A DNA stretch of 63,683 nt, counting the filler, from Octopus bimaculoides (lineage: Eukaryota): NCBI RefSeq assembly GCF_001194135.2. It is 5 parts of 4 records of this genome, joined end to end, with 100 filler letters (N's around TTAATTAATTAA, not from the genome) between each part and the next. Parts side by side here need not be neighbours in the genome. Positions count along the whole stretch, not along the records: positions 18,653 to 50,067 come from NC_068988.1; 4 more parts are not named here. One strand, given 5' to 3'. The translations under genes were made by a program, and so were the position numbers. How positions within the stretch are numbered: position 1 is the first letter of the stretch; each line of letters starts with the position of its first letter. Below are positions 12,919-41,663 of this stretch, piece after piece. The notes beneath the pieces were generated by a model. The model saw only the letters and a program-made list of their open reading frames with translations. It was not told where the DNA came from and did not search any database.

Positions 12919-14000
12919 AGTCGGTCAGGAATAGGCGGAATTTTGCAATTCTTCAAAATATATTTATACTTATGCGTGCAACCACTGAAAATGTCCGACC
13001 TGGAGTTCAATAGAGAGTTAGGGATCTTAGATCTGAATAGGATCTACGCTCTTTCAGCCAAACAAAGTCTATATTCACATAAGGTATAGATTTCTCAATT
13101 CCTTTCTACTTAATCACATGTGATGTTTGGTTATCTTTCAAAATCCATACGTTGCTAGCCAACTTAGTAGTTTTACATTTGTCCCTATGTCAGAACGAGG
13201 CTGAGCTTGGCATAGCGGTTTTTAAATTCACCTTCGGATAATCCAATATAGGTCTTCTCATCAGTTGTATTATTATTTAAGATTGCAGTAAGTTCTGCCT
13301 CATATATCATAGATCCAGTCATACATCGTTGGTCACGTGGACAGGATCCTGGCTCGCGACAGTTGCAACTGGATTCAGGTTCTTGGTATTGATTGCGTGT
13401 AATGATATTCTTCACATTGGGGCAGCAAATATATGATAGTTTCACAGAACGCCTTTTAAATGTTTTCCTCTATCAGTGAGAGGCTGGAAAGTGTTCTCCT
13501 AACAGAGACAGGAAAATTTTACTAATGTTAGTTTTTATATTAATAATTTTCCTTGCCCTATTTTTAGGTTTCTTATTATCCTGATTAATACTAGAGTGGT
13601 TATGTACGACTTTATCATTGATGCCACTAGATCTATTATTAATATTTTGATTATCATTAGAGGGATTATATATCAATTTATCTTTGAAGCCATTATTGGC
13701 TAAGGTCTTGTNNNNNNNNNNNNNNNNNNNNNNNNNNNNNNNNNNNNNNNNNNNNNNNNNNNNNNNNNNNNNNNNNNNNNNNNNNNNNNNNNNNNNNNNN
13801 NNNNNNNNNNNNNNNNNNNNNNNNNNNNNNNNNNNNNNNNNNNNNNNNNNNNNNNNNNNNNNNNNNNNNNNNNNNNNNNNNNNNNNNNNNNNNNNNNNNN
13901 NNNNNNCGTGTTGTCTTTTCAAATTTCTCTACTTCATTGTAACGTGTTGAACACGTTACAATGAAGTAGAGAAATTTGAAAAGACAACACGAAACCGGTT
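12918..14000 (-). mobile_element. Penelope-like element (linker plus GIY-YIG endonuclease), interrupted by a gap
   Basis: ORFs 13473-13922 and 13185-13445: KTNISKIFLSLLGEHFP...SYICCPNVKNII...CNCREPGSC...MIYEAELTAILNNNTTDEKTYIGLSEGEFKNRY. Frameshifted continuation ...IKWK...CLAE...LNSRSDIFSGC.H; the 3' end abuts (TA)n. Confidence 0.9.
13907..13991. repeat. Perfect 85-bp palindrome (42-bp arms, 1-nt spacer)
   Basis: CGTGTTGTCTTTTCAAATTTCTCTACTTCATTGTAACGTGTT-G-AACACGTTACAATGAAGTAGAGAAATTTGAAAAGACAACACG, checked base by base; it starts at a gap edge. Confidence 0.9.
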
Positions 14001-31068: not shown

Positions 31069-31329
31069 GAAACACCATATGTATTAACACGCAATCGTTG
31101 CACTTCAAAGAACATCTTGAGTTGAATAACTCAAAGTAAAAGAGTGAGTGATATATATATATATATATATATATAGTGAGAGAGGGAGAGAAATATATTG
31201 TGATAGTAGAAATAATTGTGATGTAGCTAATACGGTAATAATACCGGAAAATGAAGTCAGAGCTGCCATATATATACAAATAAGTATAATAAATGTTCAT
31301 GCAGAGAAAAATTAAAATGCCCATTGATG

Positions 31330-31640
31330 AGCCTCTGTATGAGTACAAATCGTGTATATAATTGTACCGTGCACACAAGGAAGGGCCGTATGTTTACATT
31401 GGGCAAACGGTTGATTCATTCAAGAATCCTTATCACAACCATGTCGCCAGGTTCAAGAGAATCAATAAGAGACATTCAACATCTTTAACCGGTCCATAGT
31501 ATAACACGCAAAACCATATAATATCATTTCCAGAAGATGCCGATTCTGCTCCGAGAAATCCCTGTCTATTCTGTAAACCAATGAGAAGAGCATTAATAGA
31601 ATTTTTGAAAGATCCTCAAGATGCCTACATGCATATAAAC
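31330..31640 (+). mobile_element. Penelope-like GIY-YIG remnant
   Basis: VYNCTVHT...GPYVYIGQTVDSFKNPYHNHVARFKRINKRHSTSLT and CLFC, across frameshifts. Confidence 0.7.
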
Positions 31641-32075
31641 GTACTTTCCCACAATACAGTGGGAATGAATTTGAGTAACTGTCAACATAACATACTTAAT
31701 GATATGGATGAATTAAGTTTAGCTTTAACTTCCCCATTCTTATAAACACCAAGTAGCTATTTAACTCGCTATGTGAACGTACGTGTACCAAACCACACGT
31801 GTGCGTATGCTTACATCTTCGTGGATCCTTGTATGAGCGAGTGTACACGCACCATACAACTTAGGCGAGTGCGTTTATATATCTATATCCGTTAACGACT
31901 TCTGCTGATACTTTTCTCGCCGTATTGCGTGTTCGTTTCTTTTTTGCATCTACTATTTTATTATTGATCTTCTATACAAATGAAGCTATATCCTTTAATT
32001 GGTTGCTTTTCTTTACACGAAATGAGAAGATGAATTGCGAAACTGTTATTTTATATCTATTTATCACCCGAAGAG

Positions 32076-36660: not shown

Positions 36661-36831
36661 TCTCCTAGCAATAATCTAGTTGATTATATATATATATATN
36701 NNNNNNNNNNNNNNNNNNNNNNNNNNNNNNNNNNNNNNNNNNNNNNNNNNNNNNNNNNNNNNNNNNNNNNNNNNNNNNNNNNNNNNNNNNNNNNNNNNNN
36801 NNNNNNNNNNNNNNNATATATATAAGGTCGG

Positions 36832-36902
36832 TTTATGGGATTTCCCTAGGTTTCCCGTCCATAAAGTGTTTAGCTTTATGGCGTATCGTCAGATCCCAAA
36901 AA
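36832..36902 (-). ncRNA. Type I hammerhead ribozyme motif in the Penelope pLTR; this copy appears mutated at U16.1
   Basis: TTTTTGGGAT-CTGACGA-T(A)CG-CCATAAAG ctaaaca CTTTATGG(A)CGG-GAAA-CC tag GG-AA-ATCCCATAAA: stem I 9 of 10 bp, CUGACGA core, long stem II, short stem III; AA where UH is expected. Confidence 0.7.
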
Positions 36903-36999
36903 CCTGTTGGCCCATGACCTCTTAAAACTATAGAGAAGGAAATGCCCCACTGCTCAATGGTAACAATTGGGGATTATCTCCCTTTGCTAATGACTATCG

Positions 37000-37023
37000 A
37001 CTTCCGGTTGTGCCGCCATCTTG
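37000..37023 (-). promoter_or_regulatory. Adjacent YY1 (CAAGATGGCGGC) and ETS (CCGGAAGT) consensus motifs at the pLTR boundary
   Basis: Minus strand reads CAAGATGGCGGCACAACCGGAAGT; the inverted copy at 38588 begins AAGATGGTTGCACAGCCGGAAGT. Function is inferred. Confidence 0.45.
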
Positions 37024-38716
37024 CGGGCCACAGAAAGCTAGCAAGAACCTCATGAAATGTAAACATAAACCGAACATCTCTTTTCTGGAGTTAAGGATGT
37101 TCCCTGGCTCGAGTGAGTCTTTTACCATTCTCGTGCGTTCAGCTATGCACAACTGACAATGCTTCGTCCTGTTGATGCAGGGGCCTAAGCTCTCGACTAT
37201 TTTCCATGAGATCGAGAATGGAATCCCATCGTCTCTCAGTTCCCAGACGTGGCTGGCCAGTGACGTTATGTATCTCCTTTCCGGAACTTTGAAAGAGGAC
37301 TTGTGGTTGGAAAGACGTTATTTAAAAGAGTTTCTGGAATATCCAATGTATCTCCGTGGGCATGTGTTTTCGGTGTGGTATTTACTGTTGTTGTTGTTGT
37401 TGTTGTTATTGCTGTTGCCACCGACATTGTTGTTGTTGGAGCTGGGATTGATTATATTGGCGTCGCTGGAGGTGGTGGTGGCGTTGGTAACTGTATTACC
37501 ATTGCCGGTTATGGTGGAGGTACTGTTGCTGTTATGGTGGTCTTCGTCATTGGTGGGGGAGTTGCCATTGAGTCTAGAGGTGTCATTAGCTGTGGTTCCG
37601 CTGGTGTTTCCACTAGGACCACTGTCACTGCTGCTGCTGTTATTTCTGTTATAGCTGGTAGTGGCACAGGACCTGTGGCTGTTGCTATAGGGGTTGTCAC
37701 ATTTGGTACTGTAGAACTTAGAGAAACTGTTGGTATTACTAGTGCTGATGGCGATGCTGCTGCTGTTGTTGTTGTTGGTGATGTTGCCGTCGGGGGAACT
37801 GCCAATGCTGTCGCTGGTGTTGTTATTGTTATTGTTGCTAATGTTATCAACTGTGGCGATGGTGGCAGTGTTGCTGGTTCTGTTCTCGTATGTACGGCTG
37901 CTACTGCTTCTACAGGTGGTATTGCTTGGGCTTGCTAGTATTTCGGTTTCATAGACGATCCCTTTGGTTTCGCAGTGGCCTCCTACCGAGCATCAGTTAC
38001 AGTCCCTGCATGAACATACTGCGTCTTCCTGTGGCTTAGGGGTGATAACTAAGATGCTCTTAATATCGAAGGTACAGCTAAACGAGACTCTGACGTTGTG
38101 CCTATTGAAAATGGGCCCGTACTTATAAGAAAAAGTGAAATGCTTATCTATTGATTTAAGGAATATACTATCCACGAGTGATTTTGTGTTAAGGGAGAAG
38201 GGCGGCAAACCAAATGGTATTTTTGCGGCGCTTCCTTCTGCGGTTGTTGGGTTCCGGCATATAGGAGATGCTGTCCCTAAATTCGCTGGCAGCTTGGGCC
38301 TCGTTGAAAATCACTTGGTTGGAGGAAAGGTTCATGATACTCTTGCTAACACCCTTTAGCAAGTTTTTGAACACGATGGGTGGGTGGTAGAAGGCTGTGC
38401 TGGTGTATGTTAGCCTATCGTTTGGTTTGCATTAGGGCCTGTATGTACCGGAGCCCAAGTCGAGCATGACGTCTAATCAGTCCGCAGTTGTGAGGTTGGT
38501 CTCTATGGGGATTTTTAATCCCATGGAGGTAAGATGCTGATTAAATCTTATCTAAACCTGTCAAATGTATGCCCGCTTGCTCCCCGAAAGATGGTTGCAC
38601 AGCCGGAAGTCGATAGCCATTAGCAAAGGGAGATAATCTCCAATTGTTGCCTTTGCGTACTTTTAAGAGGTCATGGGCCAACATGCTTTTGGGATCTGAC
38701 GATACGCCATAAAGCT

Positions 38717-38765
<49 letters not shown>

Positions 38766-39726: not shown

Positions 39727-39736
39727 NNNNNNNNNN

Positions 39737-40743: not shown

Positions 40744-41663
40744 TCACGTGGGTCTATTTCTGGTGGCATCTGTCACCTTTACACGGGAAGTGCGCCTCCT
40801 CATGTAGGTTGATAGAAGCCCCATCTCCTTTGTTTTCAGGGGGCTCACAGAGTACCCGTGGGCCTTCTCCTCGGTTGCGAATCTGACTTCGATTGTCGCA
40901 TATGCCTTTCTCCTTGCGATATATCCAATGTCCTTCCACTTAAGGGCCAAGCATTTTTCTATTATGTCCCTTTTGAAATGTTTGAACCGCTTGTTCTCGG
41001 GACAGTAGAATTTAAATATAACAGTTTTTCTTTGTATCTCTATTGCATTGGACGTGGGTGATATCTTAGTATCACTGTCCTCTTCCTTCATTCTTTCGAA
41101 GTATTCCTTCAGTTTTCCGACTGGGGTTTCAATGGTTTCAGTTGCCACTGCGGCAACTGCCGAAAATGTTTTTACAGTGTTGGCACCTCCACCAACATTA
41201 ACACCACTCTCTTCGAGAGTGCATTTTTCTTTAATAATTTCGACGGACATATTCAGTCGAAATTAATTCAATACAAAAATAGAGCCTACAACAGCTTTTC
41301 AAAGTTTACAAAAAAATGTTCAACAGAAGATATTGCTCTCAAAGTGGAAGCCTATAATAAATTTTCCTCTAATAGAGGATAATATCCAAAATCTCTCCTC
41401 CGCTAGGGGCGGGGAACAAAAACAAAGTCTGAAACGCCTTAAGTTCGAATTTATACACAAAATTCCCCCCCAAAAAGCAATGCCACAATGGCCACAGAAA
41501 TATATCAAACAGTTTCTATTTCCCGGTATACGGGGAGTAGTAAAAATAAATACAGTTCAACAAATACAACAACGATAACAATGCAAAAAAAAAAAAAAAA
41601 CAGAATCCAACAATAGCAAAACGCTTACCAACACAAAAAAAAACATGATCACGTCGTACGACC
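40744..41663 (-). mobile_element. Tx1/L1-like LINE 5' UTR plus ORF1 N-terminal fragment (ORF 40744-41250)
   Basis: ATIEVRFATEE.A...S..PL...LLSTYMRRRTSRVKV aligns by eye with ORF1 of the 52930-57847 LINE (VTIEVRFDSKE...PTYLGRRVTKIK). Confidence 0.7.

What the first reader, a model, noticed from the sequence alone, without database searches (positions are those of the whole stretch)
37342..37962. Penelope GIY-YIG endonuclease with a 200-codon, stop-free N/S/T-rich insert between its two signature motifs
Seen: on the - strand one frame runs GIVY (Y at 37953-37951), then exactly 600 nt (ETEILASPSNTTCRSSSS...NNNNNNNSKYHTENTCPRR) with no stop or frameshift, then YIG (37350-37342), and continues in frame through NHKSSF...CQLC to the ORF end. 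Two in-frame stops lie just outside the insert. The ORF track misses this frame. Known: canonical GIY-YIG spacing is about 10-11 residues; the other Penelope copy here (13185-13445) has 17, already containing NNNTT. Inference: this hairpin loop tolerates triplet-repeat-driven expansion, and the insert is diverged rather than a pure microsatellite. It may therefore be a family-level feature (a disordered, prion-like segment that could affect RNP condensation or targeting) rather than post-insertion decay.
Basis: partly seen in the sequence, partly recalled or inferred. Interest (0 to 1): 0.82.

Follow-up and report, generated by a model that had tools for sequence, protein, structure and literature searches.

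The report
Retrotransposon nuclease with shared low-complexity loop
A dead copy of an octopus-type Penelope-like retrotransposon carries a 200-codon Asn/Ser/Thr-rich stretch in the core hairpin of its DNA-cutting domain; other copies of the same family share this stretch, so it arose while the family was still active and is not local decay.

Summary
On the - strand GIVY is at 37951-37962 and YIG at 37342-37350. Exactly 600 nt with no stop lie between them, and stops sit just outside at 37993-95 and 37318-20.

The element is not Penelope proper. It is a 5'-truncated, dead copy of a Hydra-clade Penelope-like element (PLE): CxCX5C linker, no CCHH, CxxC..E..N..CxH, (TA)n at the 3' end, inverted partial copy at the 5' end.

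The missing stops prove little. A period-3 A-N-Y composition alone gives a stop-free frame 17% of the time.

Five further independent copies carry a collinear, homologous insert at the same place. One is in Octopus bimaculoides and four are in Logan assemblies of runs whose species I could not determine. They are 66-77% identical to the window in DNA and have different 5' truncation points.

Among insert-bearing copies the nuclease half downstream shows pN/pS 0.45 in the true frame, against 0.92 and 1.02 in shifted frames. So the lineage diversified under coding constraint after gaining the insert. The insert itself shows no residue-level constraint.

More distant relatives have 12-15 residues here, rarely 20-23 and once 76. 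Structure models place the site at the tip of the β1-β2 hairpin.

Any function of the insert (condensation, targeting) is untested. Verdict: new variant of a known kind.

The parts
36826..38590 (-). Main body of a dead, 5'-truncated Hydra-clade Penelope-like element: RT C-terminal remnant, linker, GIY-YIG endonuclease and 3' UTR. The 5' limit is approximate, because it abuts the inverted partial copy.
   Evidence: tblastn of intact homologs (P0027 residues 199-530, also P0115, P0264) covers 38545-37036. Translations. The 3' UTR is conserved in other copies.
38207..38560 (-). RT C-terminal (thumb-side) remnant: ..LDKI (the DKT-type motif, 38544-38552), FNQHLTSMGLKI, LDVMLDLGSGTYRP*CKPND...RRRKRRKNTIWF. 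It has stops at 38477-79 and 38432-34 and a frameshift near 38207-38220.
   Evidence: Aligns with P0001/P0027 'FLDVTLDL..G.Y.PYRKP...SNHPP...R.R.IIWFNPP'.
37990..38016 (-). CxCX5C zinc-finger-like linker (CSCRDCN*C). The TGA at 37993-37995 falls on a variable position that is Ser in homologs, not on a Cys.
   Evidence: The motif is defined for the Hydra clade in PMC8557442, section 11.
37951..37962 (-). GIVY motif, the β1 strand of the GIY-YIG core.
   Evidence: It aligns with the nearly invariant Tyr of the homologs.
37351..37950 (-). The 600-nt (200-codon) insert. Amino acids: 48 Asn, 42 Ser, 30 Thr. The composition is period-3 A-N-Y, with no stop, in register with the ORF.
   Evidence: It is homologous and collinear with the inserts of L001, L002, L004, L006 and L008.
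37342..37350 (-). YIG motif, the β2 strand.
36997..37317 (-). C-terminal half of the endonuclease, preceded by a TAA at 37318-37320. Catalytic-type residues: R 37315-17, H 37303-05, E 37138-40, N 37090-92. Also CxxC (CQLC) 37147-58 and CxH (CLH) 37057-65. The ORF stop is a TAG at 36994-96.
   Evidence: This region carries the coding-constraint signal among the copies.
36826..36993 (-). 3' UTR, conserved among copies. It holds an 8-bp hairpin (36859-36881) between a CTGAnGA box and a GAAA box, which makes it hammerhead-like but not canonical.
   Evidence: 3 pairs with compensatory changes in 4 copies. No Rfam hammerhead match.
36816..36825 (.). (TA)n at the 3' junction, followed by an assembly gap (N, 36700-36815).
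   Evidence: (TA)n targeting is described for the Hydra clade.
38583..38722 (+). Inverted partial copy of the element's 3' end, head-to-head with the main copy. It is followed by an (AC)n microsatellite at 38719-38765.
   Evidence: Inverted repeats I1 (73 nt, 89%) and I2 (65 nt, 95%). Also. TRF.

Best explanation
What the element is. The window holds a dead, 5'-truncated copy of a Hydra-clade Penelope-like retrotransposon. It inserted at a (TA)n tract and has the usual inverted partial copy at its 5' end.

What the insert is. The 200-codon Asn/Ser/Thr-rich segment is an expansion of the loop at the tip of the β1-β2 (GIY...YIG) hairpin of the endonuclease. In this clade that loop is already Asn/Thr/Ser-rich.

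How it arose (inferred). It most likely grew by slippage of A-N-Y triplets (AAC, AGC, ACC). That origin keeps length changes in threes and keeps the codons far from stop codons.

When it arose (shown). It arose once, in an ancestral active element of one octopus-lineage family, and was inherited by all descendant sublineages. Independently inserted copies share it.

Constraint after acquisition (shown as a statistical signature). After the insert was gained, the nuclease half downstream kept evolving under purifying selection.

Function (inferred, not tested). The enzyme with the insert was probably still functional. The insert behaves as a disordered loop tolerated because both ends of a hairpin loop sit side by side. 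Its residues are not individually constrained; at most its polar composition is. Whether it does anything useful, such as condensation or targeting, is unknown.

State of this copy. The window copy has decayed by about 4% per site since insertion. That accounts for the stops and frameshift outside the insert and for the lack of stops inside it.
For: Family assignment:
- CxCX5C linker, no Cys pair between GIY and YIG, CQLC..E..N..CLH, (TA)n at the 3' end, DKT-type motif (definition).
- Inverted partial copy at the 5' end.

The insert is shared:
- An exhaustive search with the window's C-terminal nuclease half found relatives at 49-65% identity.
- Wherever those relatives reach upstream of YIG, they read N/S/T-rich, or T/P/A-rich when the reading frame is shifted.
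- Their DNA is L001 (O. bimaculoides GCA_001194135.2), L002, L004, L006 and L008. It shows collinear blocks such as SSS.R.YENR..N.ATIA, DGNITNNN and NSSSIA..TS.TNSF.
- In L008 the insert is 471 nt, in frame between DVY and YIG.
- Flanks are unrelated and 5' truncation points differ, so these are separate insertions.

Where the insert stops in the family tree:
- Relatives at 45% identity or less have 12-15 residues at this position.
- A second Hydra-clade fragment in this piece has about 12.

Constraint after acquisition:
- Nuclease C-terminal half: pooled pS 0.639 and pN 0.290, ratio 0.45. The same alignment read in shifted frames gives 0.92 and 1.02.
- In the 20 of 28 pairs where synonymous change is not saturated, the corrected ratio is 0.13-0.68; in all 28 pairs pN is below pS.
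- Codon-position differences are 0.325 / 0.287 / 0.481.

Age:
- The inverted arms differ by about 8%, so roughly 4% per copy since insertion.
- Copies differ from each other by 23-34%.

The insert itself:
- Codon-position differences are 0.371 / 0.526 / 0.448, and pN/pS is not specific to one frame.
- Gaps between copies are multiples of 3 in 103 of 133 runs.
- Position 3 has a transition/transversion ratio of 2.23, against 1.19 in the 3' UTR.

Structure:
- An AF2 model of homolog P0100, which has a 76-residue insert, has confident strands at 232-242 and 310-319 and pLDDT below 50 for 251-302.
- The nuclease-only model (pLDDT 91.6) has the hairpin strands at 23-30 and 35-42. Its best PDB matches are T4 EndoII, I-TevI, Hpy188I and UvrC.
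Against: - No intact full-length ORF (RT plus nuclease with the insert) was found. All six copies examined are truncated or carry stops, so activity of the insert-bearing enzyme rests on the dN/dS signature alone.
- That signature comes from only about 90 codons and 8 sequences, with synonymous sites near saturation. Pairs are not independent.
- The species of the window and of the Logan runs is unknown.
- The period-3 pattern and the multiple-of-3 indels would arise from slippage alone, so they do not prove selection on the insert.
- The search meant to find more insert-bearing proteins was swamped by low-complexity words.
- Foldseek E-values for the GIY-YIG fold are weak (0.08 or higher).
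- No sequence match to PDB or Pfam was found.
- No canonical hammerhead ribozyme was found.
- The structure models are of homologs. The window's own translation could not be submitted because of its stops.
Confidence: 0.75

Rival explanations
1. Local decay: the insert is a microsatellite that expanded at this locus after the element died, and its open frame is an accident of composition.
For: The piece is packed with microsatellites. Composition alone gives a stop-free frame 17% of the time. The copy is dead.
Against: Five other independent copies carry a collinear homologous insert at the same position. The tract is far too heterogeneous for the roughly 4% divergence since insertion.
Confidence: 0.02
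2. Non-autonomous lineage: the insert broke the endonuclease, and insert-bearing RNAs were copied in trans by intact elements. The insert spread as a passenger, and its frame stayed open only because A-N-Y codons are far from stops.
For: No intact insert-bearing ORF was found. The insert shows no residue-level constraint. The stop-free state is explained by composition. Other Hydra-clade families with short spacers coexist in the same genome piece.
Against: The nuclease C-terminal half of insert-bearing copies shows pN/pS 0.45, against about 1 in control frames. That is not expected if the protein was useless. The catalytic-type residues Y, Y, R, H, E and N are all intact in the window copy. 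The model of P0100 keeps both strands despite its 76-residue insert.
Confidence: 0.13
3. Spread by recombination: the insert arose late in one lineage and moved into already diverged sublineages by template switching or gene conversion. In that case the coding constraint seen between copies predates the insert.
For: PLEs form tandem and inverted composite insertions, which could favour template switching. The sample of copies is small.
Against: The insert is at least as diverged between copies as the adjacent nuclease region. Per-position differences are 0.37-0.53 in the insert and 0.29-0.48 in the nuclease. So the insert is not younger than the flanks.
Confidence: 0.05
4. Captured sequence (origin only): the insert began as a piece of host or foreign low-complexity coding sequence taken up by the element, not as in-place slippage of loop codons.
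For: The tract is heterogeneous and another frame reads like a Thr/Pro/Ala-rich mucin-type segment. No test for a donor sequence succeeded.
Against: Loops at this same position are Asn/Thr/Ser-rich and variable in length in several unrelated lineages: P0120 has 23 residues with NNNNN, and P0100 has 76 residues. P0230 and P0232 read Thr/Asn-rich directly upstream of YIG, but their GIY strand was not located. The insert is in frame and in phase at both ends, roughly a 1-in-9 chance for a random block. Short pure (AAC)n runs persist inside it.
Confidence: 0.08

Closest known systems
Hydra clade of C-terminal EN+ Penelope-like elements (Craig, Yushenova, Rodriguez & Arkhipova 2021, PMC8557442)
   Same: CxCX5C linker before GIY. 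No CCHH inside the GIY-YIG core. [quoted passage not shown] DKT-type motif. Short single-ORF element. (TA)n target. 5' truncation and an inverted partial copy. Aquatic invertebrate (mollusc) host.
   Different: The described families are not reported to have a long insert between GIY and YIG. Here the spacer is 157-230 residues instead of 12-15. No canonical hammerhead ribozyme was detected, only a hammerhead-like hairpin.
[quoted passage not shown]
   Same: RT followed by a C-terminal GIY-YIG nuclease with the same catalytic-type residues. Complex tandem and inverted insertions.
   Different: They carry the CCHH motif, with two Cys between GIY and YIG. Penelope/Poseidon lacks the upstream Zn-finger linker. 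The window element lacks CCHH and has CxCX5C.
Endonucleases of Terminons (giant Athena-related elements of rotifers)
   Same: PLE-related GIY-YIG nucleases said to contain 'large unique insertions' (PMC8557442, section 12). This is a precedent for big insertions in this nuclease type.
   Different: [quoted passage not shown] The position and nature of their insertions were not compared here.
GIY-YIG homing and repair nucleases with solved structures (I-TevI 1ln0, T4 EndoII 2wsh, UvrC 1yd6, Hpy188I 3oqg)
   Same: The predicted fold of the clade's nuclease domain matches these best. GIY and YIG form a β-hairpin, followed by a helix carrying the Arg.
   Different: No detectable sequence similarity by HMMER. 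Foldseek E-values are weak (0.08-3). Those enzymes have short hairpin loops.

Membership tests
Hydra clade of Penelope-like elements | Linker with a CxCX5C motif upstream of GIY | tested here: met
   CSCRDCN*C at 37990-38016. It is CNCRxxxxC in the homologs. Definition.
Hydra clade of Penelope-like elements | No CCHH motif (no Cys pair between GIY and YIG) | tested here: met
   Homolog spacers have no CxxC. The window insert has four scattered Cys and no CxxC.
Hydra clade of Penelope-like elements | [quoted passage not shown] | tested here: met
   CQLC 37147-58, E 37138-40, N 37090-92, CLH 37057-65. They are invariant or nearly so in homologs.
Hydra clade of Penelope-like elements | Insertion into (TA)n | tested here: met
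   (TA)5 at 36816-36825 directly after the 3' end, then an assembly gap. The second fragment in the piece follows (TA)n at 31150-31176.
Hydra clade of Penelope-like elements | RT peculiarities: DKT in place of DKG, an RWK motif, a divergent RT4(B) | tested here: inconclusive
   A DKT-type remnant 'LDKI' lies at 38544-38552, and DKT is present in homologs P0027 and P0115. The rest of the RT is missing through 5' truncation.
Hydra clade of Penelope-like elements | Canonical hammerhead ribozyme in the terminal repeat | tested here: not met
   No Rfam hammerhead at gathering score or at E<=1. There is only a conserved hairpin between the CTGAnGA and GAAA boxes. This is a dead copy, so the weight of this result is low.
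Penelope-like elements in general | RT followed by a GIY-YIG nuclease in one ORF; 5' truncation; tandem or inverted partial copies | tested here: met
   The RT C-terminal remnant and the nuclease are collinear with intact homologs. The inverted partial copy is at 38583-38722. L006 is a head-to-head pair.
   CCHH is absent and a CxCX5C linker is present.
GIY-YIG nuclease superfamily | GIY and YIG strands plus the conserved Arg, His/Tyr, Glu and Asn | tested here: met
   GIVY, YIG, R, H, E and N are all present in the window. In 20 homologs Y, Y, G, R, H, E and N are invariant.
GIY-YIG nuclease superfamily | α/β GIY-YIG fold | tested here: inconclusive
   The AF2 nuclease-only model of a homolog (pLDDT 91.6) has as top PDB matches T4 EndoII (prob 0.91, E 0.08), I-TevI (TM 0.59-0.61), Hpy188I and UvrC. 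No E-value is at or below 0.001. There are no Pfam or PDB sequence hits.
Prion-like / condensate-forming low-complexity domains | Predicted prion-like composition and a demonstrated phase-separation or aggregation role | not testable with these tools
   Only composition is known: 60% N+S+T, no Q, 12.5% charged. Low model confidence was seen only in the analogous insert of P0100.

The most novel reading that the evidence does not exclude
The long Asn/Ser/Thr-rich disordered loop is not merely tolerated but selected. On this reading, an octopus-lineage retrotransposon endonuclease has kept a 150-230-residue prion-like segment at the tip of its catalytic hairpin through long diversification because the segment contributes to retrotransposition. 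It might, for example, concentrate the RNP, tether it to chromatin or to microsatellite targets, or regulate nicking.
Probability: 0.15. Interest if true: 0.75.

Novelty: new variant of a known kind. Interest (0 to 1): 0.5.

Why it matters
GIY-YIG nucleases are compact, and the GIY...YIG hairpin carries two active-site tyrosines. A family that kept a 150-230-residue low-complexity loop at that spot, while the rest of the domain stayed under purifying selection, shows how far the fold can be stretched. It marks a natural site for domain insertion, which is of interest for engineering these nickases.

For transposon biology the finding does three things. It adds an unrecorded structural variant to the recently defined Hydra clade. 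It extends that clade's documented presence in cephalopods. It also gives a clean diagnostic character for one octopus family. Finally, it is a worked example of triplet-repeat expansion inside a mobile-element ORF that the element survived.

If the insert has a function of its own, it would link low-complexity domains to retrotransposon RNP behaviour. That remains to be tested.

Tried and rejected
- Pfam scans of the conceptual translation, of the insert and of ten homologs gave nothing relevant.
- The first protein search, with the insert removed, found only one relative, because of the word index.
- The third and last protein search used an alignment that included the inserts. It was swamped by low-complexity words (8000 candidates, 1 hit) and was wasted.
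- Exact-sequence look-ups of two window ORFs found no record, so the source species is undetermined.
- A paper search for the SRA run numbers found nothing.
- Rfam at gathering score and at E<=1 found no hammerhead, only microsatellite artefacts.
- Profile searches of the PDB by sequence found no GIY-YIG protein.
- Foldseek with the full-length P0100 model was uninformative. The nuclease-only model was needed.
- The window's own translation could not be aligned or modelled because of its stops.
- Selenocysteine recoding of the TGA at 37993-95 was considered, since it is known in Naiad PLEs. I rejected it because the TGA falls on a variable Ser position, not on a conserved Cys.
- A fragment alignment meant for the exhaustive search was misaligned and dropped.
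- The dinucleotide-shuffle P of 0.0004 was rejected as the relevant null, because it ignores the period-3 structure.
Full report
**1. The observation**

On the - strand one frame reads ...CSCRDCN*CSVGGHCETKGIVY. It is followed by 200 codons rich in Asn (48), Ser (42) and Thr (30). It then reads YIGYSRNSFK*RLSNHKSSF...CQLC...ILNSR...CLH... and ends at a TAG.
- GIVY is at 37951-37962 and YIG at 37342-37350. The stretch between them is exactly 600 nt with no stop.
- The two stops just outside are a TGA at 37993-95 and a TAA at 37318-20.
- The ORF list misses the frame because it contains no ATG/GTG/TTG.

**2. Is the open frame remarkable?**

Not in itself.
- Dinucleotide shuffles rarely give a stop-free frame (0.04%). 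But the tract has a strong period-3 composition: position 1 is A in 131 of 200 codons, and position 3 is C or T in 171 of 200. The commonest codons are AAC 34, AGC 24, ACC 22, AAT 14 and AGT 10.
- Shuffling within codon positions gives no stop in 17% of trials.
- The insert's codons have 29 single-step routes to a stop, against 115 in the 298 flanking codons. The flanks carry 3 stops, so 0.76 are expected in the insert (P of none = 0.47).
- Three other frames are also nearly open.
- What needs explaining is the period-3 pattern itself. It keeps one phase through all ten 60-nt windows and is in register with the ORF on both sides. Yet the tract is too heterogeneous to be a young microsatellite: TRF finds only five short arrays.

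**3. What the element is**

*Homologs.* With the insert removed, the conceptual protein matched one database protein (P0001, 33-36% identity over 95% of its length). A profile of the two retrieved 232 proteins, of which the best 120 were listed. The longer ones continue upstream into a reverse transcriptase.

*Motifs.* The window shows these features:
- a CxCX5C linker;
- no Cys pair between GIY and YIG;
- CxxC and CxH around the conserved Glu and Asn;
- a DKT-type remnant;
- a (TA)n tract at its 3' end.

These are the features that Craig et al. 2021 give for the 'Hydra' clade of C-terminal EN+ Penelope-like elements. They differ from Penelope/Poseidon, which has CCHH and no linker (PMC8557442).

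*Structure of the insertion.*
- The copy is 5'-truncated inside the RT.
- Head-to-head with it, at 38583-38722, lies an inverted partial copy of its own 3' end. This is the classical PLE arrangement.
- The two arms differ by about 8%, so each has changed by roughly 4% since insertion. At that rate about 1.5 stops are expected in the flanks (3 are seen) and about 0.4 in the insert.
- Rfam finds no hammerhead ribozyme. However, the 3' UTR is conserved among copies and holds an 8-bp hairpin between CTGAnGA and GAAA boxes, with compensatory changes.

**4. The usual spacer**

In 119 homologs the distance from the Tyr of GIY to the Tyr of YIG is 12-15 residues in 108 and 10 in one. It is 20-23 in nine and 76 in one: P0100, an uninterrupted 420-residue ORF with a Thr/Asn/Gln/Pro-rich loop. 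P0120 has KATVTTNNNNNEDNNIEKEDEMV. P0230 and P0232 read Thr/Asn-rich directly upstream of YIG, but their GIY strand was not located. So this loop is naturally Asn/Thr/Ser-rich, and it has expanded more than once in the clade.

A second Hydra-clade fragment in this same piece (31276-31660, + strand) has about 12 residues.

**5. The decisive result: the insert is shared**

An exhaustive HMMER search with the window's stop-free nuclease C-terminal half (36997-37317) found 2022 relatives. The six closest are 49-65% identical. Five of them extend upstream of YIG, and all five read N/S/T-rich there, or T/P/A-rich where the frame has slipped.

| Locus | Source | State of the copy |
|---|---|---|
| L001 | Octopus bimaculoides GCA_001194135.2, chromosome CM046605.1 | Linker present; GIVY replaced by a small tandem repeat; insert of about 688 nt, open for about 230 codons in phase with YEG |
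| L008 | Logan run, species unknown | DVY, then 471 nt (157 codons, in frame), then YIG |
| L006 | Logan run, species unknown | Head-to-head inverted pair; both copies contain insert sequence |
| L002, L004 | Logan runs, species unknown | 5'-truncated inside the insert |
| L005 | Logan run, species unknown | 5'-truncated downstream of the insert |

- Protein and DNA alignments show collinear, non-repetitive blocks shared with the window.
- Flanking DNA is unrelated and the truncation points differ. These are therefore separate retrotransposition events from RNAs that already contained the insert.

**6. Did the element stay functional after gaining the insert?**

*Test on the nuclease half.* I aligned the nuclease C-terminal half of eight insert-family copies by DNA and counted synonymous and non-synonymous differences in the window's frame.
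- In the 20 of 28 pairs where synonymous change is not saturated, the corrected ratio is 0.13-0.68. In all 28 pairs pN is below pS.
- Pooled pS is 0.639 and pN is 0.290, a ratio of 0.45. The same alignment read in the two shifted frames gives 0.92 and 1.02.
- Codon-position differences are 0.325 / 0.287 / 0.481, the usual coding pattern.

Seven of these eight copies carry the insert. L005 is truncated downstream of it but belongs to the same family. The divergence among them therefore postdates the insert, and much of it happened under protein-coding constraint.

This fits the ages. The window copy has decayed by about 4% since insertion, yet differs from the other copies by 23-34%.

*The insert itself behaves differently.*
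- Position 2 is the most variable (0.371 / 0.526 / 0.448), and pN/pS is not specific to one frame.
- Length differences between copies are multiples of three in 103 of 133 gap runs, against 14 of 71 in the nuclease region.
- Position 3 changes are enriched in C/T transitions (2.23, against 1.19 in the 3' UTR).

That is what a disordered, compositionally polar loop evolving by triplet slippage looks like. It shows no selection on particular residues.

*One alternative addressed.* The insert is at least as diverged as its flanks. This argues against a late spread by recombination.

**7. Structure**

- A model of P0100 built on 60 homologs has confident strands at 232-242 (GIY) and 310-319 (YIG). 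Confidence is below 50 for residues 251-302.
- A nuclease-only model of a short-spacer homolog has pLDDT 91.6. Strands 23-30 and 35-42 form the hairpin.
- The best PDB matches of that model are all GIY-YIG enzymes: T4 EndoII, I-TevI, Hpy188I and UvrC. Their E-values are weak (0.08-3).
- Sequence searches of the PDB and Pfam find nothing.

The insert therefore sits at the tip of the β1-β2 hairpin, where the two ends of a loop lie side by side. That placement, not a test on the window's own protein, is the basis for calling it tolerable.

**8. Verdict**

Three points need correcting: the clade name, the canonical spacing for this clade, and the weight given to 'no stops'.

Two points remain open:
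- the functional speculation about condensation or targeting;
- whether any intact insert-bearing element still exists.

I found no description of such an insert in Hydra-clade or cephalopod PLEs in the searchable literature. The nearest precedent is the 'large unique insertions' noted for Terminon nucleases.

I rate it a new variant of a known kind, of moderate interest.

Noticed in passing
window 31276-31660 (+), with (TA)n at 31150-31176: A second, unrelated Hydra-clade PLE nuclease fragment. It is 5'-truncated just after a (TA)n/(GA)n tract and reads CSCREKLKCPLMSLCMSTNRVY..NCTVHTRKG..YVYIGQTVDSFK, with a frameshift and a short spacer of about 12 residues. It is a useful internal comparator.
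   Followed up: partly
window 38583-38722 (+): Inverted partial copy of the element's own 3' end, head-to-head with the main copy (arms 89% and 95% complementary). It has a 24-nt deletion and lacks the last 40 nt or so. The arm divergence dates the insertion at about 4% per copy.
   Followed up: yes
window 36836-36912 (-); L001 11200-11278; L005 2130-2212; L006 1618-1690: Conserved 3' UTR with CTGAnGA and GAAA boxes on either side of an 8-bp hairpin. Three of its pairs show compensatory changes among four copies. It is hammerhead-like, but with extra bases in the core and no Rfam match. It may be a degenerate or variant ribozyme.
   Followed up: partly
L006 (and L007), 250-1530: A head-to-head inverted pair of two copies of the same family. 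The left one is truncated inside the insert. The right one starts just before GIY and has lost YIG..HKSSF by deletion.
   Followed up: partly
proteins P0100, P0232, P0230, P0120 (from metagenome/ENA assemblies): Low-complexity expansions of the same hairpin loop in other Hydra-clade lineages: 76 residues in P0100 and 23 residues with NNNNN in P0120. P0230 and P0232 read Thr/Asn-rich directly upstream of YIG, but their GIY strand was not located. The hosts are unknown.
   Followed up: partly
window 40744-41250 (-): A 168-residue ATG ORF with only a faint resemblance to the first RNA-binding domain of ZCCHC3 (E 0.079, below the Pfam cut-off). It is not on record in the gene collection. It may be part of another mobile element.
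   Followed up: partly
window 36700-36815, 39727-39736 and seven other N runs in 18653-50067: Assembly gaps. The one at 36700-36815 begins right after the (TA)n at the element's 3' end, so the true 3' flank and the length of the target tract are unknown.
   Followed up: no
window 18653-50067: Very high microsatellite density: 48 TRF rows, mostly di-, tri- and tetranucleotide arrays, several of them 100% pure. This is a slippage-prone genomic background.
   Followed up: no
L001 10000-10030: In the O. bimaculoides copy the GIVYETEIL codons are replaced by three tandem copies of GGACATGCA. This shifts the frame by one base at the 5' edge of the insert.
   Followed up: no
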